A stretch of DNA of 64,000 nucleotides from Amphiscolops sp. MND2022 (lineage: Eukaryota). Of this stretch, positions 1,192 through 22,500 are shown piece after piece (the stretch's first letter is position 1; each line of letters begins with the position of its first letter). A program made the translations under genes and the position numbers. The notes beneath the pieces were generated by a model. The model had not been told where the DNA came from. It saw only the letters and a list, made by a program, of their open reading frames with translations, and searched no databases. The DNA lies in contig OZ076417.1 of NCBI GenBank assembly GCA_964187785.1, positions 30,318,001-30,382,000 on the forward strand, given 5' to 3'.

Positions 1192-1566
1192 CTTGATATT
1201 TTTATCATAATTGCTCAGCAGAAGGTGAACTCGATCCAACTCGTCGTTATGAAGCACGATATCCTCAAGCACTTCATTCGGCACTTCGGTCACATTGTCA
1301 AACTTCGTCAGCCAATGAGAGAAGACGTCCATCTCATCTTGCAGAGCTTCCGACTGGCCGATGAACGAATCGACGCTCTGGATTCGATGGTTTACTTTTT
1401 CGTGGAAGTCGGAGAGCTTTTTGGGCAAAGATTCCAGCAGAAATTTAAGACGTTTGTCCGATTCCGCGCAATCTGTTGACGGGTCTCTTTGAGCAGCTAA
1501 GACACTCACTGTTGCAACTCGCTTGTCCATGTCTCGCATCTTAGCCGCAACTTTCGCGTTAATTTT
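1192..1566 (-). CDS. Exon: spectrin repeats
   Basis: Acceptor ttttttgcag|AAA, donor AAG|gttagt, 375 bp, phase 0-0. LQDEMDVFSHWLTKFD is a spectrin motif. The gene presumably continues left of the window. Confidence 0.8.
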
Positions 1567-4500
1567 CTGCAAAAAAAATGATTTTCAATATTTCTCAAAA
1601 TCTAGCATTCAAAGCTACAGATCATACCGACGCTCGAAGAAAACACAAGACGAGAACGTCTAAAGTCGGCGCCATATCTAAGGCTCAAAAATAGCAAAAG
1701 GACTTCAATGTGTTAAGTATTCTCTTCTGCAGTACCCGTGTGAGGAAAAAATTGAAAAAAAAATTCCGAATTTTTTGAAATTTTTATTCGAATTTTATTT
1801 GAATTTTTTTTGGTATCCGGTAAGCCGCATAGTGCCAAAAAATTTAAAAGGGGGCCTTTGGGAGTTTTTAAACATCCATTCTTTTGCAAATAAGGAAAAA
1901 ATGAAGGGGGGCCCTTTGGAGACAATAAAAAAATTTGCGAAAAAATGTACAACAAAGCCGAAAAAAACCTGCACAAAAAATTTTTGGTCAAGGTTGGGCT
2001 CGAACCCACGTCCTTCTGCTTGGCAGACCTCAAAAATGCAGTAACCTCTATGCCAAGTGCCAGTAGAAGTTACAAGTGTGGCAGTTAGTGGATCATGAAA
2101 ACTGTAAAAAGTGGACCATTCAGAGTGAGATTGTCAGCTGAAAAAAAACTACCCACTGTAATAGTTGGTTTTTTTTCCTTAAGGGAAAAGGCGCCGACTA
2201 AAAACAGTCACTGCTATAGTCGAGCATTTTTCACAAGGCAAATGACTAGAATTGTACTATAAAAATATAAAAATCGCCCAAGTCAAAAAGACTGGGTTAA
2301 AACTGCATTGCCGGGAACATGTCAAAAGGGCCTGAAATTGAACTTAATTGGAAGTTCTCAAGAATCGAGGAGAATGGAACATGTTGAAACAGTTTTTGTT
2401 GTCCGAAGGGGAACAAGTTGAAAATTTATACCAATATCAGTATTAGAGCTCCGAGCGAAAATATTATGCAAGAATAAGGCAAGAGTTTTCAATATTTTTT
2501 AAATCGTTACAATGACTATATTGCAGTATTAATACCAAACGTGTCAGTTTCACTTATACTGATTTGTGATTAAAAACCAGCTAAATTAATCATATTCGAA
2601 CAAAATATTTAAACTTGCTAATTTTTTCACTTTCTATTTAAAAAATAAAAAGGGGACCGTGCGAAGCGAAACTATGTTGTTCTGCAACATGAATGATGGC
2701 CAAGAGTTCAAAGGGGCAATTTTTTAACTGAGGGATGAGATAGTGCCGAATCGCTGCAAGCTGCAGAGCCTCCTTGCAGTGTCAGTAACGGTCCCCGTAT
2801 ATACAAATACTGAAAACCTCATCAAGTGGAGGACAGATTTAAACTTGCTAATGGATCAATTTGTTAAATCATTGTTGTTCTGGAAGATAACTGAAAGGAA
2901 ATAAACAAACTCTGATCATTTTTAATTGTCGGGGAAAACCTATCAAACCCTCAGTTGCCTTTGACTGCTCAAACTAGACGCTTCTCACTGGGGGCGCTTT
3001 TTAAAATATGGCACTTTTTCACATCTGATACTTACTTCCATGAGGGCCTTTGATGACGTCAGATTGTCCACTTCCCCAGTCAAAGGTTTGATGAGACTCA
3101 GTTCCCGTTCCTGCGTGTTCAGCCACAACATTGTGTCACTCAGCATCGTCTCGCATTCACCCAGAACTGCGTTCAGGTCATCCTAAAATCAAGTATTTTC
3201 AGCATTAGCATTCTTCTTAAAACATTGATCATGCAAAATCAAGGATTGTAAAAACGGTTCCTTGCAAAAACAATAGCGCCCGCTCTCAAACGAATAACAG
3301 CTTTCATTTCACTTCCTTCTGAGAGACGCTTTAAAAATATTTTCTTATTCGAATTGCAGTAGCTACTAAAACTCAAAACAAAGAAGACCAGTGATAGTGA
3401 TTTTCCAAAAATTTCATGGGCGTTTGAATTTTTTTTGGAATTCCCGAGTACGTGTTGGAATAATGGCTCTTGCAACATCGAGCAAAGCAAGGGCTAATAT
3501 ACCGCATGGCAGGCGGAACATATAATGTAGAGGCCCGGAAGACCATTTGAAAAAAATGCAAAGTATGTTTCATGAGCTAGTTCACGTAAGATCTGCAGAG
3601 AAGACCAAATTTTGAGTTTTTACTAAGCCAATTCCAAAAAAACATCACTCTCAAATGCATTTTGATGTGAACATGATTTAGATTTACGTCAATCGAAAAT
3701 TGAGTGACTTACATTTTCTTTTTGTCGGTGTTTTTCCTTCTCGATTTCTCCTTGAATGTGCTTGATGTTACTAGCCGAGACATCGTACACTGAGTCGTAA
3801 CCAGCCGAGAGCCGACTGATGGAGTTTCGGATCTGCCGAGTTTGTTCGGGGGTTAGATACTGGCTTCGTTTGTCCAATAGAATTTGCATCTCGCTGACTG
3901 CTTCTGTCATCAACTTTTTGTGCTCAATTATTGATTGGTGCATTTGCTAAAAAGTTAGATTTATTATTTCATAGTTAAAATCAGAAAGCTTATGACTGAA
4001 TTCTATGAGAAAACAAAAGATTCTCAATTTTGAAAAAAATGAGCAAAAATACTGGAAAGAAGTAACATTTAATACAGATCATTACAAGGGAAACTTACTG
4101 AGAAAAAGTTATGGTTAGACGTATGTCTACTTCAAGATAAAAGAAAGATAAATTATCTAATAACTGAAAAAGTTGTAACAAACCCGATGAAACCTCCAAT
4201 GGAGCTTCAATGAAATAAATAGTTGAAAAAGTTAACGAAGCATCATTAAAAAAAAACAAAACAATAAAACCGGCAGCCACTTTTTTCGCTAACATAGACA
4301 CTAATGCGACCAAAAAGATTGGGCAGCCGATATGACAGTTGGCCCTAACTGTTACAGCGTTGGCTTCTGGAGCCAAAGGACAGAGTTCGATTCTCACTTG
4401 GATCCGATTTCTTTTTCGTTTTCACATATGTTCGAGATCAAAAGAGTTTTTCCGACACTGTGCGAATTTTTTCGAATTTTTTTTAAATCGGAAGGACCCC

Positions 4501-7500
4501 TTTGGCTTTAATGGTGTTTCCGACACGAAAAGCCAAACGCGCGCGAAGTATTTTAGTTTACAAGTCCAGTTTCACAATGTTCAACACCCGAAACAAATGT
4601 TACGTATACAATGATTGTAATATTATGTGCACCCCCCCCCAATCATTAATACCAAACACGTCACTTTCACTTATACTAATATGTGATAAATAACCAGCTA
4701 ATTTAGGCATTTTTACAAAATATTTAAACTTGTCAATCAAATTTTTAATTGTTATAATTATCAAATTGTTAATTATTCATCGTTGTGCTAGAAGAGAAGT
4801 GAAAGGAAATGATCTCACCTTTTGCAGTGCAGAGGCGGTGGTCAAGGGCTCCATGCCACTCTTCTCCCTGGGCATGAGGGTCTGGGACAGCTTGTTCTCC
4901 ATGCTCTGCAGCCACGAGTCGTACTCATTGGCCATCGTCATGCACAGTTCGTAGTCCAGCTCTGTGTCTCGCATGTCAGTGGAACACACGGACTGCCAAC
5001 AACAACCATTCACAACATCGACGCACAATGAAAACTAAGACTCCATAAAAACTTTTTCATGGAGTCTCACGGTATCAAAACCTCAAGGTAATCCTAGGTT
5101 GAAAAACATATATAATTCTTGAAAAAATCTTGCAAGTCAATGCATTATTCTTGCAAACTGTCTCGCAAGATTCTTGCAAGCAACGGATTGCAATGGCAAG
5201 ATTCTCGCAAGAACAATGCATTGACTTGCAAGATCTTGCAAGCTTCGACTGAAAATTCGAGTAAAAACTTTTCTCTGTATTCTCTCTATTGAACATCACC
5301 TGATGATCATTCACACTAATTCCTATTCTCACTTACTATCGATATGGCGATTGCAGACTAAAAGTTTTAGTATTCAAGTATTTTAAGATGATGAAAGCAA
5401 ATGTTGATTTGCCGATGTTGAAGAAGATGCGCGTTGGTCAAGTTTTTCGAGAACTTCATCGTAAAATTGAAGAAATTTTGAAACCGAAAATGAGGGGGGT
5501 TGGATTCCGCACTTGGTATTCAAGATGAGTTTTCTATTTTAATTGGCGTTCCAAGTTCCAAAAACAAGGGACCATGGAAAGGTTTGAGACAAACATTGAA
5601 TCAGAGGCAACAGTGGCGATATTTATATTTAAAATGTATGATACTTTATACTGACCTGTAAAGAAGACGCGGGGGTCATTAGTCCGGAAGTCACTGGCCC
5701 TGATCCCAGTTTCTGGACTGCTTCATCCGAAGCAGGAGGTTCCAGGGTCTCTGTAGATGCGGTTGTAGGAGTTACAGATTTCTTCTCTGGCAAAGTGGAA
5801 GAGCCAGTTGTAGAAGGAGTCGGTTTTTTGGTCGCTGTAAAAATGTCAACCACTGAGAAAAAACCAAATCCTTCAAACCCGAGAAGTTAAAGCTTTACGT
5901 TGAAACAAGATTTTGAACCACATTTTGAGGAGCACCGTGTCCATTGAATGGTAAATTTCATTGAAATTGGATGGATGAATTTGTCAAGATATAACACTTC
6001 GTCAACAATTTTGATCAAATTCGACTATTTATGTGGCTCAAAATGTATTTCAAACACAAGAGTTCGAATTGACTTCCGAAAACCGACTGTTCAAAATTCA
6101 TTTTCTCATGAACCCACTCCCTAGGTGATACCAAAACCAAAATGAAATGCATCAAAATCCATAGAGGTGATAGAGGAAGAAAATTGAGAATAAAGTCTGA
6201 ATATGAAAACCCATTAGTGACTGAAGCAGTTGTTGGATGAAATATTTTGCACACAAACCGAACACGCCAATTTATTAGACCTGAAATAGGTTACGTTATT
6301 TTGACTATCAAAAACTCAAAATTAGGCAAATTAAGGTATGCTGTTAATTTTTGATGAGTTATGCAGTTAAAATCTGGTATTACTTTACATACTGGCACAA
6401 TACGGCAAAGAGCATATTATCATTTTTCAATTTCAAGATATTGAAAACGGAGAAACTGTTTTGGAATGCTACGGATATAGGATCTTGTTCCATGCATTTT
6501 GGATAAAAATTTGGGAAACGCAGTGATTTTTGGAGAAAACATGAAACCTGCAATAACTAAGGGACCACGAAGCCGGGATTAGAAAATGAGTCTTTCAATT
6601 GAAAAGGTGAGATACATTTTTTAAAGAAATCGAGCGTGGAAGAATGACCTGAAAAAAAACATTGCTCTTTCACTTCAAATCCAAATCTCGGTGAAAAATT
6701 CCAAAATTTCAACATCCTTCAAAAATCTTTCACATTAGATAACTAACCTTTACGGCCTGGAGTTGTCTTTTGCTGAACAGGGGCTGGTTTTTTATCTGGT
6801 ACCTTTTTCCGAACATCCACTTTTGGGACAGTTGTGGTTGTTGGTGTTGTTTTAGGGCTCCTGTTGGAATTAGATGAATTTGATTCCAGACTAGACCTTC
6901 TGGATTTCAAACTGGCAGGTTTGGTTACGTCAATTTTGGGACTTTTCAATCCGGACTGAGTAGATCCGGAACCTGACCTCAGCGGAGGCGTGGCACTTTC
7001 TGATTTTATAGGTTTTGTTGGTTTTTTGGCAATTGTAGGTTTGGCGATTGTTACTTTGCTTGGTCCCTTTTTCTTCGGTGGTCTCTCTTCAACCTTCGCT
7101 TTCGCTGATCCTTGACTGGCTAAGCTTTCGCTACTAGAGAACAGCTGTTCATAGACTTCCTGGGAAATCAGTTTCTTCTGGATTGCTTCCGAAGGATGAA
7201 TGATTGTTCTGGTCGTTTCGTCGATGATGCCGGCGACTCCAAAAGCGCCTGGCATGGAACCGGCAGGTAATTCGGGAGTTTCAATCAATCCCTTGTTGGC
7301 AGCTGCAGTTGGAGTGACAAAAAGTTTAGTTTTTGGGTCGTAAACAACGGTTTCGGGAGTATCACTGATGTCAGTGGCAGAAGACGCTACAGAAAATATG
7401 TCATCATCAGCAATCCCCGCTTTCTCTTGAGAGTCTGTAATTGATTTGGCGTATGTTTCGGGGTCAAAAGTTGAACAGATTATAGACACAGGTGGCTTGC

Positions 7501-10500
7501 GAATCTCTTTCGATTGGAAATCAATGAAAGCAAAAGAAGTGGAAAATGATTTCGGGTCTTCTCCAACTTTGGAGGCAACAGAAACGAATTCTTCAGGAGT
7601 CAAGAGTCCCATGTTCAAAGCACATTCCAGTGGCATCACCTGGTTTGTACTTGGGTCCAAAATTGTGATTCTAGAAGCACTTTGGGGTGAAAATGCTTCC
7701 GGGTACTCTTGCTGTAGGGCTCTTATCTGTGAAGGCGCGATTACGTTTTTGTTCAAAGCTTCGGAAGGTCGCAACACAACGCCTTCTTTCACAATTAGCA
7801 AGCCAGGTACTTTTGAGGAATCATGTTGGAAGTTTTCATACAAGGCATCAAAAGTGTCCTGAGAGATTTCACCAGCATTTAGTGATGTTTCCACCGGTGT
7901 TACAGTCAACTGATCAGGACTGTACAGGCAAAGGCCAGTGGGTTGTCGATTGTGTTTAAACGTGGATGCATCAGACCTCAGCTTATTCAGAGTCTTTTGA
8001 TCGACTTGTCCTTCTCTGATAGCTGTTTCCAAAGTTTTGCTGAGTCGTGTATCTCGGTCGAACACGACAAGCTTACCTAGTTTAGCCGGACTCGCGGCTA
8101 AATTTTTAGCAACTTGGACAAAATCTTTCATCTTCATCAAACCCCTGGATGGGACTCTATCCAAGGGTATCAGCTGGTTCTGCTCTGTGTCTAGGGTTCG
8201 AATTTCAGAAGGCAGATTCCAGGGTTCAATTGTATCTGGCAAAACCCTGGACAGCTCCAGGCATTTAGGTTCATCGATTAGTCCGTTTTCCAGAGCACGG
8301 CTCAGTGGAATCAAAGGGTTTTGTTCGTCAATGAAAAGCAAGTTTTTGGTAATCTCCTCAGGTTTTTGCACCATTTTTGCAAAAACTTCAGAGACCGCAG
8401 CTTCTGAAACTTTATTCTGTCGTATCAAATCTTTCAATAAGTACTGAGTTTCTGTCTGGATATCAAAAACTTTGAATGTTGGAATGAAAACAGGTTGAGC
8501 AATTCCAGGATGCAAACATTTCAAAGCTTCCAGTTTTGCTTGATCCAAAAATCCTTTGCTCAATGCTTCATGAGCGGGCATGAGGGTATTCATTCGGGGA
8601 TGAACTGTCATGATCTTCGTCACTTTTTCAGGGCAGTTTTGCAAATCACTCATTAGACTGTCATACATGAGTGATGTAATCACCCCCGATTTGAGGGCTT
8701 CGGTTAGCGAGAACAGTTCTCCAGTTACAATGTCTAGCACTTTGAGTTGATTATGTTTAACAGGTTTGAAACCTTCCGGGAATGTTTCTTTAAGTTGGAG
8801 GTAAAATTCTTCATTGATGTACCCAAACTCAACAGCGTCTTCAGGAGAAACCAACTCTCCGTAGTCGTCGATTAGAACTAACTTTTTCCATGCTTCAGGG
8901 AAGTCATTCAGCTCAGCTAGAACTTCCAAGTACTTTTGTGAGCTTATATGACCTCTATGCACTGCTACTTCGATTGCAATGATTTCACCGCTGAAGTTAT
9001 CCAATACAAACACTTCACATGGGCGAATTGATTCCAAACAGTCTGGGTTGTTGTTGATGAAACTGTTATACAAGTCATGAGAAATGATTCCTTCGTCCAG
9101 TCCAGCTTTCAGTGACACCAGACATCCAGTTTCAGGATTGAGAACCATAACTTTGGTAACTTGACTCGGGTCCTCGAGCAATGTTTGGGTGATAGTTTCG
9201 TAAACTCCTGTACTCAATCTTCCAGACATTACAGCGTTTTCCAACATCAATATTTCAGCGCCATTTTCCAGAACCACTGTGATTCCTGTTGGGATGGTTC
9301 CTTCAAACGCGTTTGGGTGCAGATCTCGAAGTTCTTGGAACAGATTCGGACTTAGACATCTACTGATCACGGCTTCTGATGGTGTATACAAGTCGCCTGT
9401 GTTGGGGTCAACAACCATGACTTTTGTCACTGAGTAGGGGTTTTCGGCGGCTCGTTGCGTAACTTTGGTCAACTTCTCCAAGTTTGTGAACTGATCTCGA
9501 ATTGCATCATCCGATGACATAATCTTGCCACTGTCACTGTCGAGTATGAGGAAACTGAATGACAAGAACTGGTCAGCTTCTTTCGGGTGCAGGTCGTAGA
9601 ACCTTTTGTAGTCTTCGGCTGATAGGATTCCGTTTCGCAAGGCTTCGTCGAAGGAACTGATTTGGTTGTTGAGTGAAGAAAACACAACAGTCTTGGTCAA
9701 ACAGTGGGGTTCTTCGACTACTTTGTTTAGCAGTTGTTGGTAAATTGTGTGAGGAATCAATCTCTGTCGCAAAGCTTCTTCCAGAGTTGCGAATCTCTTG
9801 GAAGGCAAAATGAACACATTGAGTCCTGTAGCATTGACTGATTCGAAAGATTCCGGAAAGGCGGTTGCAATCGCGTTGTATCTTTCACTTTCAACGATTT
9901 TCTTTTTGAATGCCTCGTCCAAGGTAAGAACTTCATCTGACAACGGGTTGTACATCATCAATTTACACAGGAACTCAGTTCCTCGTTTGTATCTGTTCAA
10001 GGTCTCGTTGTAAACTTCAGGAGAAAGCATTCCATTTAGAACTGACTTCTCAATAGGAACAACAACGTCAGTGCCAATATGCAGAACCGAGATTCCAGAT
10101 GATCGAATTGGCATCAGCATGTCTGACTGGTTTTCTGCCAGCTCATCGAAAGTTTCTACATCCAAAAGTTCCAGGTCAACTGCGGCTATTGGGGTCAAAA
10201 AGTTCCCAGCTTCACTGTCAAGAACCATCATCTTGGTGACCAGCTCGGGGTCAACTTTCAGCTTTTGCAAGAACTCTCGGAATGTTTCCTCGTCTATCAA
10301 TCCGGTGGCAAAAACATCAAATAAGGGTACAATTTCCTCAGTTTCCGAAACGTATATTACAACACCTGTGTCCTTTAGAGGTTCTCTTATCTTGGGATAG
10401 TTCTGCTGCAACGATTGAAGTTCTATCAAGTCCAAAGCTCCAGATGCCAACGCTTCTTGTGGTGTTATAAGACAGCCCAAACTTTCATCAACTAGTAAGC

Positions 10501-13500
10501 ATTTGGTTAGAATTTCAGGTTCGGTCCTCAGCCTTTCCAAAATGACTGCAGCGTTTTCGAGTGAAACGTAATTGTTGGAAATTGCTTCTTCCAAGTTCAT
10601 TTCAGTGTTGAACTCTTTCGAGTAAACAGATAGACCCGGTGACTCCAAAAAGTGGCCTGCAGATTTTGTGTCACGAAGTAACTTCTTCACTTTCTCAGGA
10701 GTAACAATCTGTCTCCGCACAGATTCGTATAAGTTGAAGATATCTTTGCTCTTTTTATCGTAGACCAAAACTTTCGTCAACACGTGTGGCGTTGTTTCCG
10801 CAACTTCCAAAATTTTGGAATAAACTTTTTCAGATAGCTTTCCAGACTGGAATGCAGATTGCAAAGACTCTAGTTCAAATGTTTCCTCGTTTACAATTTT
10901 AATTTTATATTCCAAACCTGGCAGCAAGGCGAATGATTGTGAGAGCTGTTCAATGCCTTCGGGTGGTATCAAGTGGTTCTGGACCGCATCATCAAACGTC
11001 ATAAACTTCTCCGATACTTTGTCCCAAACCAGAGGACTCTGGCACTCATTATCGGAGTCAGTGAGGTCAAGAACATCACTAAGCTTGAACATTTTCTGCT
11101 CTATTCCTTCTTTCAGTGGATGAATTTTACCGGTATTCAAATCAACAACTGTGGTACTTGAGTTTTTATAACGGAAAACGTCTTTGGGTTTGAAAGAGTC
11201 CAGTGTTTTGATGTCAATCAAATTCGTCTCCAGAGCCTGCTTCAATGAAACAACCGAACCTTCCTCCGGGTTTCTAACAAGAAACGATGCAACATCCGGG
11301 AAGTTTTCTACAAGTTTTGCCAGAGTGTCCGAATAAGCTTCTGGGTGTACAAGGCCCAGGGAGAAAGACTCTTCCAAACTTCTGGAGCAGGCATCTTGGG
11401 TGTCATAAACTGCGATTCCACTGGGTTTTAGAGGATGCAAGAACTCCGCGTGTTCATGGAACAGATTTTTGTAGATTTCTTTGGAGAGCGATCCTTCCAA
11501 GTATCCCACTACGGGTGAGAGAAGTTCACCTTTTTCGGTCAAAACAAGCAAAGACGGAACCCCCTGAGGTACTTCAATTGCAATTTGTGACAAACTGTTG
11601 TATTTTTCGTAAGTCATATAACCCAAATTCATAGCATCCTCAATCGTGAAAATCTCTGCAGTTTTTGGGTTCAATATTTTGATTTTAGAAGACAACACTT
11701 TTTCGAACCCTCGGGTGAAATTTAAAAACAAAGACTCAAATTCTTCAGAGCTAATCAAGTTCGTCTCTAGCGCATTTTCTGGGGTCATCACTGAATTGGT
11801 TCCTCTATCTACCACAGTAAGTTTTGGCATATAAGCCGGTGAAGTTGCGCTCCTTACCAAAACAGATTGCAATTGACTGAAATTGAGCACACCCGACGTG
11901 AATGCTTCTTCCAGTGAACTCACATTCTTCGAATACGGGTCAAAAACTTGCAACGAGCTTAGAAGGGTTTCATCAGGTAGTTTTTGAATCAAAGAGTCGT
12001 AGATGCAGTCACTGATTAGACCTTGAACAAGAGCTTCTGCAGCAGTCAGTAGAAACTCGGAGCTCGCTGTTTTCTTCACAAAAGATTTTTCTCTGTTTTC
12101 AATTTGAGCAATTTTGTAATATCCTTCCACGGTCAAATGTTCGGAGATACAAGCCTTATCTGCTGGGTATAGAGTTTTCTTTTCTGGAATGTAAAGAAGC
12201 AAAAATGAAGCCATTGAATTGTCGAAGTAAAGCGAAGTCAAGTAGTTTTCAACTGCTTGACGCTCTACAACATTGTCAAGAAGTGCATCCACAAGATGCC
12301 AAACGTCGGCACATCCTTTTGAGACAATCGAAATGGGCGGGAAGTTCGGGAACGTGGCAATAAGTTGACGTGTTTTGACAGGCACTTGGTCAACTTGTTG
12401 CGTTTCAGCATTTAGGACATTTATTTCAGCTGATCGCTGAAACAATGCAAAAATACGGTAAGCCGAGATAGTTGCATTAAAACGTGAACGGATGTCGGAT
12501 AGTTGGAACTCTGTAATGATTTTCTTCTCAACTGCGTCGTGAATTGGCATAAACTCAGTTTCTGATTTCTGTAGAACTAAATTGGCAAAGACAAGTAAGC
12601 AAAACTTGTCAACTTCTGATACCAAAGTTGCATCGAGGCCTTCACATTCTTCTTTGCTGATGAGTTTTCTATGTTTTGCTTCTTCTGGGGAAACTTCAAT
12701 GTCTGAGTCATGCACCGGGAATACAAAAATCCCAGGTAATTGTCGAACTTCGGATCCTTTCTCATTCGTTGAAAACTTGCCACTGTTCAAGTTGTAAACA
12801 TTCGGGAGTTGAGAGTTCTCAAGTGTGAAGTGAACAAGCTTAGGTGCGGAAACTTGGACCAAAGACATCGTCGACACTGCTCTTGACGATACTTTTGATT
12901 CTGGGTCGGACATGAGCTCTTGCGAAACACTAAGACCGCTCGTCGCTAGAGTAAGCAAGTCTGATTTCGCAACTGATGCATTTCGCAGCGCCAAGTAACT
13001 TTCCATGTCAAAATATCCCAAACCGAGAGCTTCTTCGAGACTGAACTCCTCATTTGTCACCGGGTCCACAATGGAAACTCGTCCAGGCACGAACACAACT
13101 TTTTCGGGACCAAAATCAACTGGATCTGTTTCTTTTGACTTGAGTACTTTGTACTGGGCATGTGAAATTATTCGCTTCCGGTAGGCCTCAGCAAGCGAGT
13201 AAAGCTGTGAATTGAAGGGATCTTGAATTGTCACGGTTGGAAGTTCGGAACTACTGTCAGAAATGTCGCTACTGAATGCCTTGCTGATAACCCTGTCATA
13301 TGTTTCTTTGTCTATTAATCCATGCTCAAGGGCTTCATCTAATGTGTACGTTTTCCCAGAAGACTTGTCGGTTATGACAATCTTAGTTGGCAATGGTCGT
13401 CTTTGAACGGTTGGAATTTCATCATTTTTGTTGGCTTCTGATCTTAATCTCTGGAACACGCCCAAAGAAATGAGGCCTCTCGCAAAAGCCTCTTCAGGTG

Positions 13501-16500
13501 AAAAAGTTTCGTTGGTTTCAGAATGGCTGATATAAATTCCTCCTTGAATCTGAGATACTTTCAGTTCATGAATGCCCATTCTTTCCTGAGCTTTCAGCTC
13601 CAGGTATTTCAACTCATCAATCAATCCGAAATCCAGAGCTTCGTCCAAGCTTTTTTGTTCCCCGCTTTCAGGATCAGTGATAAGGATCATGCCTTTACTG
13701 GAACTGGTTTCATCAACTTCTTCTTTTTCTGTGTCTAATGACTCGTCCAAATCTAAATGAGACATTTCATGAATCAACTGATACAGTTCGGGGCTGATTA
13801 CATTTAGAGCCAAAGCATCATCCAAAGATATGGATGCCAGATTGGTTTTGTCTATTACTGAGAAATGCAGCATTTGCCAAATCCTAGATGTTCTGGGAAT
13901 CTCTTCCACAATTTTGTCCGTTCGTTCTTCCAAGATTTCGCAAGTATCACTGTTGATCAAACCTGATTCAAAGGCTTTTGCAGGAGAAAGCAGTGCATCG
14001 GTGCCAGGGTACGCAACTTTGATGACAAGCTCGAAGTTGTCTCTCAAAGAAGGACTTTCGATTGGTTCGGGTTCCAACACACTTGTGATTTCAAACAATA
14101 GCTTGTGGTATGTTCTTTTATCAATTAGGCCAATTTTCAGAGCTTCATCCGGCCGGATTACAGATCCACTGTTTGCATCATAGACCATAGGAACATCGGG
14201 CACTTCTTCAAACTTGAATCTGGGTTCCTTCGGTTTCTCGATTCCAGGTCTGGTTGGGGTCACAGGGCTCTCGCGTAATCCCAGATTTGACCTAACAGGA
14301 ACAGTTTGGGTTGTCTGAATTGTGACCAGTTCAATCGAAGTGTCGATTTCTTTCAAATCACAGTAAGTTGAATGGTCAATGAGTCCTCGTTTGAATGCCT
14401 CGTCAGCAGAAACCTTTCCGTCTTTCAGTTGAATTTTGTCAGTCGGCGAGGGTTCGATCATGAACGCATGCTGCACTTCAACTTGTGGGTTCAATTGCTG
14501 CAAGAACTGCATCTTGCCTTCGCCCAGTTCAGCTTCTTCGGTGAAGTACAGAGTTTCAGATGATTTAGAAACAGTCAGTTTGCCACCATTGTCTTTCATT
14601 TGCTGGTATTCCTCATCAGTAATAGGCACCCCAGTGTCAATACGCTCCTTCAGCTTCATCTCCCGGTACGTTGTTTCGTCCAGAAGACCTCTTCTTCTGC
14701 CTTCTTCCAGTGATATTCTTTCCTCAGTTATTGGATCAATCAGGGAGACCCTTTTGACTAAATTAGCCAGAAGTTCTTTCTTCGGATGCATCAAGACAAC
14801 TGGACTGGTGGCCACAACAGACAAGGGAGAATAAAGTTCACTTTGGGCATCTTTTTCCTTTAGCATTGGATCATCTGAGACCAGATTTGTGAGTGCTTTC
14901 TCTTGTTTCTTCTCATTCGTCGTCTCCTCCTTAGGTTTTTCAGCGACAATTGGTTCAACAGCTGTTACTTGAGGTAAAATGATACCAGCATTTTTAACCG
15001 CTTCCACCGACATTTCAGAGTTTGTACTTGGGTCAAAAATTTTAGTCTTTTTAGTTTTGGAACTTCGTTCTTTCAATGTCTTATACATATCTGAGTCGAT
15101 AACGTTGGATCTCAGAGCTTCTTCCAAAGTCATTTTGCTCCCAGTTTCTGGTGAAACAACTCGAAGTATCTTTCGTTTCACTTTCTGGTACTTCTTCTTT
15201 GAGGGCGAGGTAGACCCAAAACTCTCTGGGGTTTGTGATTCGAGAGGAATTGAGAAACCTTCTCCCAAAATGACATCAGAAGAAACGGTTGGTTCTTCTT
15301 TAATTGGCAAGTGTTCTTGACTGATAACCTTTCCGTCGACAAACTTGTACTTGAATCGTCGTCCATCGTCAGTTTCGATATTGATGTTCAAAGTAGTTGT
15401 GCTGGACAATTTCAAGTTTTCATTATCCTCCAACTCAACTGCTGTTTGCGCTGACAATGCAGGTTCTTCAGTAGCATCATATGGAACGACGATCGCATTC
15501 GGGTCTTTCTCAATTTCACCAACAAGGCTCTCGTCGGTAACTGAGAACTTTTTGCGTTGAACTGTTTTCCTTCCACTAGTTGGGTCAGCGATAGTTTTCT
15601 CCAAAATTATGAACTTCTCTTCCACACTTTCAACAGGAACATCGGGAGTTTTTATCTGCTTCACACTTATTCCCACTGATGGGGAGTCACAAACCTCAAG
15701 AATTTCATCGTCCGCAATCTCTTCCTCTCCGAACTTCACAAATTTCTTCTCGGCTTTGCTGGATTTAATTTCAACTGAGTTTATATTTTTGGATCTTACT
15801 TCCAGAACTTCGTCTGGTCGTTTGTTGCTAATTTTAGCGGCTTCGTCTTCAGTTTGAAGAGCTAAATACAGCTTCGAAGCTTTCTTCGGCGATGCCTTCT
15901 TTTTATGTGCCTTCTCCGGACTGATAAGTCCAAAAATGCTTTGGGTCGACAAACTTTTTGTCATTTTGCGAACGAGACATGCCTTTGAGCTGTAATATGA
16001 TGTCATCGTGAATCTTTGGTTGTTTTCTAGACATTCTCTTGAAACTATAAAATATCGACTGGTGCCATCAAAGTGCTCTGAAACAGAAATGGAACCCAAA
16101 TGTCGAATTTGAACACAGACTTCGAAGCCTTTCAAGTCAGGTACCAATTCGTTTCTGTCTAATTTTTCGAACTTTGCGATGTCGATGGCATCCAAGTGCT
16201 GAATGACTTCAGTGGCATTGGGCATCGTTTTCAAGCCCATCAGTAATTTTTGCGCAGATAACTTTTCACTTTCCGGAACATTGAAAAAACACTTGAGCGA
16301 AGACTTTTTCAAAGACACCTTGTGTCGATAAAACTCGGGAATTTCTTTTGCTGTAGAAGGAATCCAAAAAGTGCTTCTCTTAGTCTGGTTTTTGTCGTCG
16401 TCTTTTCTGATGACCGAAAATTCAATGAGTCTTTGAGGGTATGTGGCTGGTGTTCGATTCACCAGCACTTTCAAAATGATCGACCTGTAAGTTCTGGAAA

Positions 16501-19500
16501 CTGCGAAGCTTTCTTTCCTTTTGTCTGATTGACTGATGAGAATCCTCTCACCTTGGCCATTTTTGTCAAATGTTTCATCCAGCGAAAATCTGTTGGTTTC
16601 TGAAAACTTCAACGACATTTCGGGATTTTCAAGCTCCACTTTCGGGCATTCCGCGAGATGGCAAGTATGCAAGAAAAATTCCTTGTCCAAGTGCTCAACA
16701 GACATGATTCTTGGACTTGAAATCTTCCACTTGCTGAGCAAGGTTTTGACAGGCCTTACGTCATCGGAATTGAACACTTCATCGTCAGGATTTATTAGAC
16801 GTGAGGTATTTGTAACTAATCTTCCTTGATCGTCCAACGATGTTTTCTTGACTTCCAACAAAGAACCCAGAGTTTTAGTTTCTCCTTTTTGCTTGAAAAC
16901 GAGAGTTTTCTGGGTCACAGCTACAATTTCAGGAGCCCGAGTGAAGAAAGAGTGCCTAGTCACTTGCGTTTGTTTTCCAGCGCCCATATGTGAGTATACA
17001 TCGACATTTGTTTGCATGAAGCCTTCGTCTGATTTCAATTCTACCTCAGAAACCCTCACTGACTGAACTTCTGAAATCGCAATAAGCACTTGACAAGGTT
17101 CGAACTGAACAAACTCGTGGGGCATGAAATTCGTCAAGAAGTCGTTTTTCACATCAACGTTTCTGGTTTTTTGCAAATTACTTGGAATTCTATCAGCGCT
17201 AGGCTTGATTTCGAACTCCAACGTCAGAAGTGATGCAAAAAGAGCATCGGATTTATCAGTCCAGCGTTTAACATGGAGTGTTTTTCCATTTTTCAAAACG
17301 AACACCAGCGAGGTTTGATAATAAGTGCCCTCAAACGGAACAGCTGCGCTATGGGTATCTTGGATTTCACTTGGATTGAGAACTTTTATTTCAGCATCCG
17401 TAGAAACATAATGACGCATTTCCGCAGACTCGCTGTCTTCGCTATCAGGAGCTGCATATTTCACAAAAACATCATATTCAATGTTGTCATTCAAGTAATA
17501 CTCCAAACTTCCTTTCAAAAAGTTCGAAACATCGAATCTAGTGATCAGTGACCCGGGTTCTTCAATTTCTTTTGAGATACTCGCCAGATCCAAAACGTTC
17601 GTGACTCCAGTTTGTCTTAGATACTTCAAAAGTTCGGGATCATCATGTTTGTAGTATCTCACTGTCTCGAAAACTTCTCCCGTGCTTGTACTGTCTTTCC
17701 TGGTAAGTTCAACGTACTGTTCCGGGTTTTCTAGGAAGTATTCCGGACTTGGTTGTACATTTTGGAGTTCTGGGGCATCAAGACCGTAGCGTCTATATTC
17801 GGTTATAACTTCACCTTGCTGTTTGATACGTTTCACTGATAAGTGGTAAAACTTCTTGTTGATTTCCTTGATGTTTTGCAAAGTGACGTCTTTCAAAGGA
17901 TTGATTTCGAGAGCCGTTTGTTTTAGCTCCTCGCTGTCACCCGATGGATCGACTTCAGTTCTTGGCAAAGATTGCTTGAAAACGTCATCTGACGCAATTA
18001 CTTGAGACTGTCGCTTATTCTTCTCATCATCTTCCTCCTCGATGTCTTCAACTTCTTGAGGTTCACTTTCTTGTGGTTCAACTTTCGTTTCAATAGCAGT
18101 CAAGCCTCTTTTGAAATCTGGAACTTTCTGCAATGTTTCTGTCTCATCTGAAACTACAGCTGGAATCTCATCTGTTTCATGAACTGGCTCGTCATAACCT
18201 TGAACGACACTGGTCTCAACTCGCAAACACCGCGACGTCGTATCATCTTCCGGCTTTTCACCCTCCATAATCAGAGCTTCGTCTTTGGTATATTGCAGCG
18301 ATTCAGGTCCAACCATTGGAATGCTACTAGCAACTAAATGTCGTGTCTGTGATTCGTGAGGCTCTTGTCCTTCTTTTTCAATGCTTTCATCATCGACAGC
18401 GTTTGTATCTTCTTCTGGAGACAATTCTATTTTGTCAGTAGCTAAGAATCGGGAATGTGAATCAGAAGCCGCCACTTCAGAATCAATAGGAGTTTCGCCA
18501 ATTTCTTCTGATGTGATATCTTCGGTAGTCTGCAGTTGCGGAATCTTTTCACCGTGGAGGAAGGTTTTTGAAGTCCCCGATTCTGGAATACTTGCAGTTT
18601 CTTGATCTACTGGCTCTGGCGATTCAGGTTCCAGAAGTTGCTCCAAATTGTCTGTTTGTTTTTGTTCAACATCTTCTTCTAGTTCTGAGTCTACTTTTTC
18701 AGCGGATTCTGGTTCATACATATCTGAAAGAACTGGTTTTTGATCGACCGGATGGGTAATTTTAGGCCAGTCAAAAGCTCCAACTTCTGCTTCTTTTTCA
18801 TTCAAAGCAACTATTTCATCAATGTTTGAAGGAACTGGTGCCGATGAAAATCGATTGGTTACGGCATCAGTATCTGGATCTCCCATTTCTTGTATCAGTT
18901 TTTCAGCGTCATCATTTTCCAATTCAACGTCGTCTATCAAAACTGGCACTAAAGTATCACTCGTTTCCGGCTCCAACTCAGTTTTCAGTTTTTCATTCAA
19001 CACTGGTTTAGTTTCTTGTTCAAAAACAGGTTCATTTAGTTTTTCTTCCGACTCAAGTTTCTCTTGCAAACTTTCCTCCGGTTCTCTTTGCACCTCGGAT
19101 CTTTTCTCAAAGTCTGGTCGAAGTTCGGACTGGCTTTTGTGATAGGGTTGTTCAACAGATTCAGTCAGTATCTCCTCGGAGTCATGTGCAGGTTCTTCAA
19201 CCAAGTCATGGTCGCCTTTCAAGACAATCATTTCTGCTGTCAAAAATCTTGACGCCGAATCTGGTTTTATTTCGTCTGGTAAAGCTTCTTTTTCATCGAC
19301 TGCTTCTAGTTCTTGTCCAACTACTGGAATGCTATCTGTGGCTAAGTGACGTTTCTGTGGATACTCAGCACTATCCGGTTGTTTCTCGAAGTTCCCGTCT
19401 TCGGGAACTAATGCGTCTTCTTCTGGGGACAATTCTACTTTTTCAGCAGCTAAGAACCGGGAATGTGAATCAGAATCCGCCACTTCAGAATCAATAGGAG

Positions 19501-22500
19501 TTTCGCCAATTTCTTCTGATGTGATATCTTCGGTAGTGTGCAGTTGCGGAATCTTTTCACCGTGGAGGAAGGTTTTTGAAGTCTCTGGCTCTGGAATATT
19601 TGCAGTTTCTATTTGTTCCGTTTCTTCCGTCTCGGCATCTGCATCGTGGCACACAGGAAATCGATCGAGAGTTTCGGCTTCTAAACTGGTTAAAAACCGT
19701 TTTCGAGACTCTGTGTTCACTTGATCTACAATCTCATCGTCGTTTTGTTCTTCAATTTCTTCATCGCTTTCTATAAGCGAAGTGTCCACTTTTGTAGAGA
19801 TTCCTCTCTTGGTATCGGGCTGTGCAACTGGACTAGCCATTGCTTTGTCGTCGTCTCTTGTTTCGAAGGCCATTTGAACGACAGGTTCGCTTTGGTACTG
19901 TAGAACGTTTTCATCATCCGCAGTGTCGTCACTTGTTTCAGACACAACATTGACTAGAAGAGTAACAGCTGGTTCTGCGCTACTTTCTTTCTCTGGTTGT
20001 ACAATTACATTCAAGGTCTCGTCGGTAATTAAAAACTTGTCTCCTATTGGAATACTTTCGACGACATCCCGTAAAGTGTCCTCTTCGATCTTTGTTTCAG
20101 GCTGAGCTAGATTCTCTGCTCTTTGAGTTTTTTCTTCGAGGGCTTGGGTAGGTTGAACTTCTGAAGCAATCACTGATTCCTCAATTTGAGAGGGGGTAAC
20201 ATGGTCTGAGGAAAAATTTTCATCCACTTTATCAATGTATGATACACCTGAAACAGAATCCACATCGGTGGGGAAAATCTGATCCTTCGGTTCATCGACG
20301 AACATCGGTCTGTCACTTTTGACGTGGTCAACCTCTTCAATGGCACCAAGTTCCTGGACTTCCTCTATTTCAGGAGCTACAACTGCAGGTTGGCTTGAAT
20401 CCAACATTTCAGCAGAATCCAGTTTGCTTTTGGAAACTTCAAAAGATGCACCTTGTAGGTCGCTTGTTTCGGGATGCTGTTCAAGAGTTTCATTATCATC
20501 ATTAGGTAGTTCGCTGGCAGCGATCTCATTCCGTAGAACAATCACGTCCCCCAGAGAAACTAGCTTTGAGTCGTCCAGTTCCTGAATAGTGTCAGACTTT
20601 GCAAAAGCGACGCCTTCTGCCAGTAAAGCAGGGCTGTATCGATCTTCTGGAATGTTTTCAAATTCTTCGCTCATTAGTTGTAAGTTTCTGCCCATTTGTG
20701 ATATCAGTTCATCAGAAAGCAAGCTATCTTGGTCTACGCCAGTGGTTCTTTGATCCATTAGTCCTGGCGATTCAGGTTCCAGAAGTTGCTCCAAATTGTC
20801 TGTTTGTTTTTGTTCAACATCTTCTTCTAGTTCTGAGTCTACTTTTTCAGCGGATTCTGGTTCATACATATCTGAAAGAACTGGTTTTTGATCGACCGGA
20901 TGGGTAATTTTAGGCCAGTCAAAAGCTCCAACTTCTGCGTCTTTTTCATTCAAAGCAATTATTTCATCAATGTTTGAAGGAACTGGTGCCGATGAAAATC
21001 GATTGGTTACGGCATCAGTATCTGGATCTCCCATTTCTTGTATCAGTTTTTCAGCGTCATCATTTTCCAATTCAACGTCGTCTATCAAAACTGGCACTAA
21101 AGTATCACTCGTTTCCGGCTCCAACTCAGTTTTCAGTTTTTCATTCAACACTGGTTTAGTTTCTTGTTCAAAAACAGGTTCATTTAGTTTTTCTTCCGAC
21201 TCAAGTTTCTCTTGCAAACTTTCCTCCGGTTCTCTTTGCACCTCGGATCTTTTCTCAAAGTCTGGTCGAAGTTCGGACTGGCTTTTGTGATAGGGTTGTT
21301 CAACAGATTCAGTCAGTATCTCCTCGGAGTCATGTGCAGGTTCTTCAACCAAGTCATGGTCGCCTTTCAAGACATTTATTTCTGCTGTCAAAAATCTTGA
21401 CGCCGAATCTGGTTTTATTTCGTCTGGTAAAGCTTCTTTTTCATCGACTGCTTCTAGTTCTTGTCCAACTACTGGAATGCTACCTGCGGCTAAATGACGC
21501 TTCTGTGGATATTCAGCACTATCCGATTGCCTCTCGAAGTTTCCTTCTTCAGGAACTAATGCGTCTTCTTCCGGAGTCAAGTCAACTTTCTCAACTGCAA
21601 GGAACCTCGATTGTTTGTCATCTGGCATTTCAGGCAGTTGTTCATCGGTAACTTCCAATGGGGCATTTTCAGTAACTTCTCCAACGGGAATCTTTTCGCT
21701 ATGCAAGAATGTTTTAGACAATTCAGACTCCAACTGTTCTGTTTCCATGTCTTCCAATCCCTCAATTGGTTCAATTATATCACCACTTGTATCAAGCTGA
21801 TCGACGCTTTCCTGTTTCACACCAGTTAGGAATCTCTTCTGAAGCTCAAATTCCAATTGGTTTCCGGGTTCTTTGTTTTCGACTTCTTCTATCTCTTGAG
21901 GTTCGAAAGGAGAAGACTCAATTGTTGTGAAATTTCCTTTAGGTACATCAGAATTAACCGATAAACTTGGTGAATCTGTGTCAGCGCCTTTGAATTTAGG
22001 CTCAGAATCTTCTTCAATCACTGGTTCAACCTTTTCTTCTGGCTTGAAAGTCTGGTCTTCCGACAGAGGTGTTATCCTTTGCCAATCCAGAGTTCCAATT
22101 TCAGCGTCAACTTCTTCTAGAGGAACTATCTCATCAATTTTCACATGCATAGGAGATGAATGGGCGTCAGTAACTAATAAATCCGGGTCTGGTTCTCCAA
22201 GCTTTTCGATAAGTTTGACCGAATCATCGTTCTCTAATTCGACATCGTCGATCAATACTGGGACTAAAAGGTCACGTGGTTTTTCGTTCAACTCGGACAC
22301 CAATTTCTCATCTAATATTGGTTCCAGTGGCTTTGGAGCCGCTTCTTCAGTTTCTGCCACATCTTCGGCTAGACTTTCTTTTTCGTCAACTTCACGTGTA
22401 ACTTTGCTTAACTGCGAATCTGGGAATTTGATATCTTGTTGGCTAGGATCAACTATAACCAGGTCCACTGCTGGATCTTCAAAAGACTTCGGTTGAGTGT

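What the first reader, a model, noticed from the sequence alone, without database searches (positions are those of the whole stretch)
7560..11950. Plectin-like repeats arranged as an uninterrupted run of ~16 alternating ~90-aa A/B dimers rather than 38-aa PRD globules
Seen: the anchor (L/V)TK(V/L)hhhD recurs at a ~90-aa period (LTKVLVYD to LTKCLLVD to VTKMMVLD are each 90 aa by count). Each period holds two DP.TG..h(T/S)..EAh..Ghh..E.Y..L-type halves joined by extended helical linkers (...HP..F.P...(T/S)Gh.Vh and ...L...PE.hTK). Known: canonical plectin repeats are 38 aa and fold as 4.5-repeat globular domains that bind intermediate filaments. Inference: a non-canonical, possibly rod-like or solenoid plectin-repeat superstructure with perhaps a different ligand.
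Basis: partly seen in the sequence, partly recalled or inferred. Interest (0 to 1): 0.7.

Follow-up and report, generated by a model that had tools for sequence, protein, structure and literature searches.

The report
Regular 90-residue plakin-repeat array in spectraplakin
A giant exon of an acoel worm's cytoskeletal linker gene (MACF1/Shot type) ends in 17-18 back-to-back copies of a 90-residue unit made of two different plakin repeats, a strictly regular layout that differs from the globular plakin domains of vertebrates and from the repeat regions of the 16 named other invertebrates checked.

Summary
On the minus strand, codons 3485-5001 of a 5266-codon open frame (window 7541-12091) form 17 clear units of about 90 residues, plus one degenerate unit. 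The similarity peak at a shift of 90 residues has z = 16.7. Each unit holds an A-type and a B-type plakin repeat of 44-46 residues. Pfam Plectin scores 130 bits.

The exon is the internal plakin-repeat region of a spectraplakin. The Symsagittifera MACF1-like protein is 64% identical. Exons for the actin-binding and plakin domains lie upstream, and spectrin-repeat exons lie downstream.

Number, order and spacing of the units are kept in relatives only 26-29% identical. Symmetry every 90 residues does not fit closed 4.5-repeat globules. AlphaFold models (pLDDT 85 and 77, pTM 0.61 and 0.41) give a hairpin plus two helices per repeat. Only one repeat at a time superposes on solved plakin structures. 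The array is acidic (net -86).

Röper and Brown (2003) already reported that spectraplakin plakin repeats are not grouped into such globules. Sixteen named protostome relatives show a 27-residue period instead, with a 99-residue super-period in most arthropods. I rate this a new variant of a known kind. Rod shape, ligand and expression remain unshown. The scan had already identified this gene as a spectraplakin from its neighbouring exon.

The parts
6743..22543 (-). Giant open frame (5266 codons plus stop), the third giant exon of a MACF1/Shot-type spectraplakin gene. The N-terminal half is acidic and carries no Pfam domain. The C-terminal half is the plakin-repeat region.
   Evidence: residues 3500-5000 are 64% identical to Symsagittifera roscoffensis MACF1-like isoform X8.
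12344..15181 (-). Irregular first part of the plakin-repeat region (residues 2455-3400). Plakin repeats occur at variable spacing and there is no 90-residue lattice.
   Evidence: Pfam Plectin; no peak at shift 90; shift 101 has z = 4; profile hits at spacings of 49-169.
12092..12343 (-). Degenerate unit 0 of the array (residues 3401-3484).
   Evidence: 1.6 bits only, but in register and also present in the relatives.
7541..12091 (-). Seventeen well-formed 90-residue A/B double plakin repeats (residues 3485-5001). This is the finding itself.
   Evidence: periodicity, profile, A/B classes. (AlphaFold secondary structure).
7130..7351 (-). Two further single plakin-repeat motifs after the array (residues 5065-5138), off the lattice.
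   Evidence: profile hits at 5065-5091 and 5107-5138.
6746..7129 (-). Tail rich in Lys, Pro, Ser and Thr (residues 5139-5266), ending in the stop codon. In the Symsagittifera isoform the corresponding tail is spliced on to the spectrin repeats.
   Evidence: sequence; residues 5002-5266 have net charge +13.
1192..4998 (-). Downstream spectrin-repeat exons of the same gene, at window 4717-4998, 3707-3973, 3024-3179 and 1192-1575. They are colinear with residues 2861-3170 of the Symsagittifera protein.
54217..55203 (-). Upstream exon matching the plakin domain of an arthropod spectraplakin. A calponin-homology exon lies about 8 kb beyond the window end on the same strand.

Best explanation
The stretch is the second, regular half of the internal plakin-repeat region of an acoel spectraplakin (MACF1/Shot/dystonin type). 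It lies in a giant exon between the actin-binding and plakin-domain exons and the spectrin-repeat rod.

It consists of 17-18 units of about 90 residues. Each unit pairs an A-type and a B-type plakin repeat. Each repeat is a beta-hairpin, a short helix and a longer helix, followed by a linker of about 7 residues that usually contains a proline. This makes each repeat 44-46 residues long, not 38.

Because the sequence repeats every 90 residues, with no longer super-period, the chain cannot close into 4.5-repeat globules. It must be an open array whose repeating structural unit is one A/B pair.

Inferred: both junctions are structured, so the array is a continuous, fairly stiff, elongated segment of fixed length. 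It would act as a spacer or docking scaffold within the giant cross-linker.

Inferred: its acidic surface makes the known way of binding intermediate filaments, through a basic groove, unlikely.
For: Identity and context:
- Pfam Plectin scores 130 bits on the stretch and 265 bits on the C-terminal half of the open frame.
- The stretch is 64% identical to a named MACF1-like protein that also carries spectrin, EF-hand and GAS2 domains.
- Spectrin-repeat exons lie downstream, and calponin-homology and plakin-domain exons lie upstream, all on the same strand.

Lattice:
- Self-similarity has z = 16.7 at shift 90, equal peaks at 180 and 270, and nothing at 38.
- Of 107 units in six proteins, 53 are exactly 90 residues long and 75 are 89-91.
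- The A and B classes separate in 30 of 34 tests.

Constraint:
- Relatives only 26-29% identical keep 17-18 units in the same order. In 12-14 of 17-18 cases the best match of a unit sits at the same ordinal position.
- The linker proline at column 88 is kept in 86% of units and the lysine at column 3 in 79%.

Fold:
- The four-unit AlphaFold model has pLDDT 85.4 and pTM 0.61, with hairpin-helix-helix in every half. The eight-unit model has pLDDT 76.8 and pTM 0.41.
- Foldseek ranks plakin structures first (5DZZ, E = 4.5e-6), but TM-scores are only 0.10-0.14.
- Rigid superposition covers one repeat only: 43 residues at 2.9 A on 4QMD and 38 residues at 1.7 A on 4Q28. Two-repeat alignments give 7.7-10.8 A.

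Charge: the array has net charge -86 over 1601 residues. Nineteen columns are at least 30% acidic and three are at least 30% basic.
Against: - No coordinates or error maps were available, so the elongated shape and the packing between units are indirect inferences.
- The alignments behind the models are shallow (24 and 12 rows) and partly made of paralogous windows.
- pTM drops when the modelled length doubles, and pLDDT dips at some A-to-B linkers. This would also fit hinges.
- No RNA data exist for this genome. The four runs that hold the stretch are genomic contigs.
- The function is pure inference. For the corresponding region of Drosophila Shot, the literature reports only localisation to adherens junctions (PMC2173965).
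- A conserved lysine just before each A hairpin lies within one or two residues of the periplakin arginines needed for vimentin binding (PMC7035337). Filament binding is therefore not excluded.
Confidence: 0.6

Rival explanations
1. Beads on a string. Each A/B pair folds on its own as a small two-lobed module like the plakin linker domain, and the 18 modules are joined by flexible hinges. The array would be a compliant tether, not a stiff segment.
For: - The only solved plakin chain found by sequence covers one A/B pair: the periplakin linker 4Q28, E = 0.03, 77 residues aligned.
- pTM falls from 0.61 for four units to 0.41 for eight units, and pLDDT drops below 50 at some linkers.
Against: - Both junction types keep their length almost without insertions or deletions across proteins 26% identical, and the inter-unit linker proline is kept in 86% of units. 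Hinges normally drift in length, as in Shot, where gaps are 7-128 residues (PMC2173965).
- Only 38 residues superpose on 4Q28. A forced two-motif alignment gives 10.8 A.
- Pfam's periplakin-type model PF26346 is not hit at E up to 1.
Confidence: 0.25
2. Ordinary plakin repeat domains. The array folds into a series of globular 4.5-repeat domains that bind intermediate filaments, and the 90-residue period is only a by-product of sequence history.
For: - Pfam Plectin hits.
- Foldseek's best hits are plakin repeat domains.
Against: - There is no 38-residue period and no super-period of about 170-230 residues. Peaks at 90, 180 and 270 are of similar size.
- Half repeats and variable inter-domain linkers are absent.
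- TM-scores to these domains are 0.10-0.14, and only one repeat superposes.
- The net charge is -86, where a basic groove would be expected.
Confidence: 0.05
3. A periodic filament-binding platform. The conserved lysine before each A hairpin and the partly basic column before each B hairpin form one weak site per unit. Eighteen such sites would bind a periodic polymer (intermediate filament, microtubule or actin) by avidity.
For: - Column 3 is basic in 79% of units and columns 46 and 83 in about 40%.
- The structural alignment puts the column-3 lysine next to periplakin R1655/R1656, which are needed for vimentin binding (PMC7035337).
- The unit number is fixed across relatives.
Against: - Every unit but two is net acidic.
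- Units keep position-specific sequences and no common surface.
- Only one intermediate-filament rod locus was found in the genome, and its type could not be settled.
Confidence: 0.15

Closest known systems
Internal plakin-repeat region of Drosophila Shot and other protostome spectraplakins
   Same: - The position in the gene is the same: between the plakin domain and the spectrin rod.
- It is encoded by one giant exon.
- The repeats are not grouped into 4.5-repeat domains (PMC2173965; review 10.1101/122010).
- The gene family is the same.
   Different: - In the 16 named protostome proteins tested, the basic period was 27 residues in 15 (z = 9-27). That is a short repeat, apparently a hairpin plus helix 1. 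Most arthropods add a 99-residue super-period.
- Helix 2 is reported as poorly conserved in Shot, with gaps of 7-128 residues.
- The acoel array has full repeats with a clear helix 2, units of 44-46 residues, strict A/B alternation and a 90-residue period. It has no 27-residue signal.
Vertebrate plakin repeat domains (desmoplakin B and C, envoplakin, plectin; PDB 1LM5, 1LM7, 4QMD, 5DZZ, 2N03)
   Same: The repeat motif is the same: a beta-hairpin and two antiparallel helices. One acoel repeat superposes on envoplakin over 43 residues at 2.9 A. The Pfam family is the same.
   Different: - Those domains are closed globules of 4.5 contiguous 38-residue repeats with a basic groove that binds intermediate filaments (PMC4782060, PMC2173965).
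- Here the unit is 44-46 residues, the symmetry is 90 residues, the packing of neighbouring repeats differs in the models, and the charge is acidic.
Plakin linker module (periplakin and desmoplakin linker; PDB 4Q28)
   Same: It is a pair of plakin-repeat-like motifs in about 100 residues with an elongated shape. It is the only solved plakin chain whose sequence aligns across a whole A/B pair.
   Different: - It is a single module with a basic groove needed for vimentin binding (PMC7035337).
- Here the pair is repeated 18 times head to tail and is acidic.
- Pfam PF26346 is not hit.
- Only one motif superposes.
Epiplakin (from my own knowledge, not tested here)
   Same: It is a very long run of plakin repeats encoded by a single exon.
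   Different: Epiplakin is built from 13-16 canonical plakin repeat domains with linkers and has no other domains. The acoel array has no such domains and sits inside a spectraplakin.

Membership tests
Plakin/plectin repeat (Pfam PF00681) | Profile score above the curated cut-off of 20.5 bits | tested here: met
   129.9 bits on the stretch. 264.7 bits on residues 2634-5266. 20 of 24 four-unit windows hit the family.
Plakin/plectin repeat (Pfam PF00681) | [quoted passage not shown] | tested here: met
   The AlphaFold secondary structure shows it in every half-unit. One motif superposes on 4QMD (43 residues, 2.9 A) and on 4Q28 (38 residues, 1.7 A). These are predicted models, not solved structures.
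Plakin/plectin repeat (Pfam PF00681) | Repeat length of 38 residues | tested here: not met
   There is no signal at shift 38. The signals are at 44, 46 and 90.
Plakin repeat domain (globule of 4.5 repeats) | 4.5 contiguous repeats folding into one closed globule | tested here: not met
   Sequence symmetry is 90 residues, with equal peaks at 180 and 270. TM-scores are 0.10-0.14. Only one motif superposes, and two-motif alignments give 7.7 A.
Plakin repeat domain (globule of 4.5 repeats) | Conserved basic groove | tested here: inconclusive
   Net charge is -86 over 1601 residues, and only 3 of 90 columns are at least 30% basic. No surface could be mapped without coordinates.
Plakin repeat domain (globule of 4.5 repeats) | Binding to intermediate filaments | not testable with these tools
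   This needs co-sedimentation or co-localisation experiments. The genome shows one filament-rod locus of unsettled type.
Plakin linker module | A pair of repeat-like motifs forming a two-lobed module with a basic groove | tested here: not met
   The pair is present and aligns weakly (E = 0.03). However, PF26346 is not hit, the two-motif superposition gives 10.8 A, and the charge is acidic.
Spectraplakin (MACF1/Shot/dystonin) internal plakin-repeat region | Part of a gene that also encodes calponin-homology, plakin, spectrin-repeat, EF-hand and GAS2 domains | tested here: met
   The ortholog P0003 carries spectrin, EF-hand and GAS2 domains. Spectrin-repeat exons lie downstream and calponin-homology and plakin-domain exons upstream, on the same strand of the same contig. 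EF-hand and GAS2 exons were not searched for in this genome.
Spectraplakin (MACF1/Shot/dystonin) internal plakin-repeat region | Included in mature transcripts | not testable with these tools
   No RNA run holds the stretch. The four runs laid on it are genomic contigs without joints.

The most novel reading that the evidence does not exclude
Plakin repeats may build lineage-specific periodic super-structures, not only the 4.5-repeat globule. Candidates are a 90-residue A/B heteropair lattice in acoels, a 27-residue short-repeat lattice in protostomes and a 99-residue super-lattice in arthropods.

On this reading the acoel array is a stiff filament of fixed length, with 18 units kept since the split of lineages now 26% identical. 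It would work as a molecular ruler or as a periodic docking rail for a ligand that is not an intermediate filament.
Probability: 0.3. Interest if true: 0.6.

Novelty: new variant of a known kind. Interest (0 to 1): 0.45.

Why it matters
How the internal plakin-repeat regions of spectraplakins fold, and what they bind, has been open since they were found in Shot in 2003. The paper could only say that a globular domain was unlikely.

The acoel array is the most regular example seen here:
- full-length repeats
- two alternating classes
- almost no length variation
- a unit count conserved across deep divergence

That makes it a convenient object for solving the first structure of a plakin-repeat array that is not a globular domain, and for asking whether such arrays set a length or bind a periodic partner.

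The comparison across phyla (27, 99 and 90-residue lattices) suggests that these regions are ordered structures and not loose strings of motifs.

Tried and rejected
- **Overlapping windows for the alignment.** MAFFT staggered them by true identity, giving 1455 columns. I replaced them with non-overlapping windows.
- **Expression evidence.** No RNA run holds the stretch. The four runs laid on it are genomic contigs of one sample. They show 5 single-base differences and no insertion or deletion inside the array.
- **Relatives of the regular array itself.** A sequence search of the 1.84-billion-protein library returned only four proteins, all acoel-like.
- **Source organisms of the distant relatives P0005, P0006 and P0008.** Only unnamed ENA assemblies were returned. 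P0006 was too long for the contig look-up.
- **Type of the single filament-rod locus.** A search for the lamin tail domain (PF00932) found nothing, so lamin versus cytoplasmic filament stays open.
- **Periplakin-type Pfam model PF26346.** No hit at E up to 1.
- **The unit profile against the two upstream giant open frames.** No hit.
- **DNA tandem repeats in the array.** None.
- **An unnamed protein, P0024, with a 90-residue period.** It turned out to be 27+27+36 short repeats, which is a different lattice.
Full report
**What is there.** The finding lies on the minus strand inside an open frame of 5266 codons, window 6743-22543. Two more giant open frames lie upstream on the same strand: 23087-37624 and 39415-46452. 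Pfam Plectin (PF00681) scores 129.9 bits on the stretch and 264.7 bits on the C-terminal half of the frame. The N-terminal half has almost no Pfam signal.

- The anchors LTKVLVYD, LTKCLLVD and VTKMMVLD sit at residues 3922, 4012 and 4102. Six more anchors fall on the same lattice.
- Self-similarity of residues 3532-4995, compared with shuffles, has z = 16.7 at a shift of 90 residues, 10.8 at 180 and 11.0 at 270. It has z = 4-5 at shifts 44 and 46 and nothing at 38.
- A profile built from the units finds a chain of 18 units starting at residue 3401. The first is degenerate. The other 17 (residues 3485-5001, window 7541-12091) score 62-91 bits and are spaced 83-91 residues apart, mostly exactly 90.
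- With the tested position left out of training, profiles for A halves and B halves assign 30 of 34 half-units to the class expected from alternation.
- The column profile is hTKLLVh......Lh.P.EAL...hI for the start of A and ...I.VhD.....hh.LE-Ah..G.I....Y for the core of B. A proline sits in each linker: column 39 in 52% of units and column 88 in 86%.
- There is no DNA-level tandem repeat, so the array is old and diverged.
- The first part of the plakin-repeat region (residues 2455-3400) is not on this lattice.

**What gene it is.**
[quoted passage not shown] That protein continues into spectrin repeats, EF-hands and a GAS2 domain.
- In the window's own genome, exons matching the spectrin repeats of that protein lie directly downstream on the same strand, at window 4717-4998, 3707-3973, 3024-3179 and 1192-1575.
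- Exons matching the calponin-homology and plakin domains of an arthropod spectraplakin lie upstream, at window 54217-55203 and about 8 kb beyond the window end.
- The stretch is single-copy in the 1.07-Gb genome.
- It is therefore the internal plakin-repeat region of a spectraplakin, in the same position as in Shot, MACF1b and dystonin-b (review 10.1101/122010). An earlier agent of this scan reached the same gene identity from the neighbouring exon.

**Conservation.**
- Only a few relatives of the array exist in the large protein libraries. Three of them (P0005, P0006, P0008, from unnamed assemblies) are only 26-29% identical.
- These still show the 90-residue peak (z = 8-9) and the same 17-18 units in the same order.
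- In 12-14 of 17-18 cases, the best match of a unit in such a relative is the unit at the same ordinal position.
- Of 107 units in six proteins, 53 are exactly 90 residues long and 75 are 89-91.
- So number, order and spacing are under constraint, and the units have not been homogenised.

**Structure.**
- A four-unit AlphaFold model was built from 24 rows of orthologous and non-overlapping paralogous windows. It has mean pLDDT 85.4 and pTM 0.61. Every half-unit is a beta-hairpin, a 6-residue helix, a 10-13-residue helix and often a one-turn linker helix.
- An eight-unit model from 12 rows repeats this pattern with pLDDT 76.8 and pTM 0.41. It has dips at some A-to-B linkers.
- Foldseek ranks plakin structures first (5DZZ at E = 4.5e-6, then 4QMD, 1LM7, 1LM5, 2N03 and 4Q28). 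TM-scores are only 0.10-0.14, with rmsd of 13-26 A.
- I had no access to coordinates or error maps, so the overall shape is inferred, not seen.

**Why not ordinary globular domains.** Apart from the models, the sequence itself repeats every 90 residues with no longer period. A chain of closed 4.5-repeat globules would show a period near 170-230 residues, half repeats and variable inter-domain linkers. None of these is present. Two readings remain: a continuous open array, or a string of two-motif beads. I favour the first, because both kinds of junction keep their length and their proline across deep divergence. The drop in pTM with length keeps the second reading alive.

**Charge and ligand.**
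- The array has net charge -86 over 1601 residues. All units but two are acidic. Nineteen profile columns are at least 30% acidic and three are at least 30% basic.
- Known plakin domains and linkers bind vimentin through a basic groove (PMC4782060, PMC7035337).
- The one well-conserved basic residue is the lysine of the TK anchor. By structural alignment it lies next to the periplakin arginines needed for vimentin binding, so filament binding is not excluded.
- The genome shows one filament-rod locus whose type I could not settle.

**Comparison with what is known.**
- Röper and Brown (2003, PMC2173965) described the giant plakin-repeat exon of Shot. Its 33 repeats are not clustered into 4.5-repeat domains, gaps are 7-128 residues, helix 2 is poorly conserved, and a globular fold was judged unlikely. 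The general idea behind the finding is therefore not new.
- The specific lattice is new as far as I could test. Fifteen have a basic period of 27 residues (z = 9-27); the flatworm protein, with only six profile hits, shows no clear period. Most of the arthropods add a 99-residue super-period. None has the 44/46/90 pattern.
- One unnamed protein has a 90-residue period, but it is built as 27+27+36 short repeats.
- The acoel array differs in having full repeats with a clear helix 2, two alternating classes and strict spacing.

**Verdict.** The stretch is a new variant of a known kind, of moderate interest. Its main value is as a very regular object for solving how non-globular plakin-repeat arrays fold. 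Expression in this species could not be tested.

Noticed in passing
Proteins P0010, P0020, P0034, P0036, P0078, P0112 (arthropods); P0019 (annelid); P0129-P0134 (molluscs); P0135 (nematode): The internal plakin-repeat regions of protostome spectraplakins show a strong 27-residue period (z = 9-27). This looks like a short repeat of a hairpin plus helix 1. Most arthropods add a 99-residue super-period, with z up to 23 in Darwinula. I did not find this lattice described in the papers read.
   Followed up: partly
Protein P0024 (unnamed, Logan source), residues about 2625-3530: About ten well-conserved 90-residue units, each built as 27+27+36 short plakin repeats. The period length matches the acoel array but the substructure is different.
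   Followed up: partly
window 18293-22483 (-), residues 21-688 and 748-1417 of the same open frame: The acidic N-terminal part holds an internal duplication of about 670 residues. Overall identity is 53%, and by eye a core of about 260 residues is nearly identical.
   Followed up: partly
window 15182-17866 (-), residues about 1560-2450: About 890 residues between the acidic part and the plakin repeats have near-neutral charge and no Pfam match. Nature unknown.
   Followed up: no
window 6746-7540 (-), residues 5002-5266: After the array come two off-lattice plakin repeats and a basic tail rich in Lys, Pro, Ser and Thr. Residues 5002-5266 together have net charge +13. The frame ends in a stop here, whereas the Symsagittifera isoform splices on to spectrin repeats. 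Both a short isoform ending here and a long one may therefore exist.
   Followed up: no
window 6400-12300: Four genomic runs of one sample cover the stretch in single contigs. Inside the array there are 5 single-base differences (7580, 8724, 10847, 11765, 11996) and no insertion or deletion, so the frame is kept in the other allele or individual.
   Followed up: yes
G000:C9:43906614-43912727: This is the only locus in the genome that matched the intermediate-filament rod profile. No lamin tail domain was detected anywhere, so it is unclear whether this worm has cytoplasmic intermediate filaments.
   Followed up: partly
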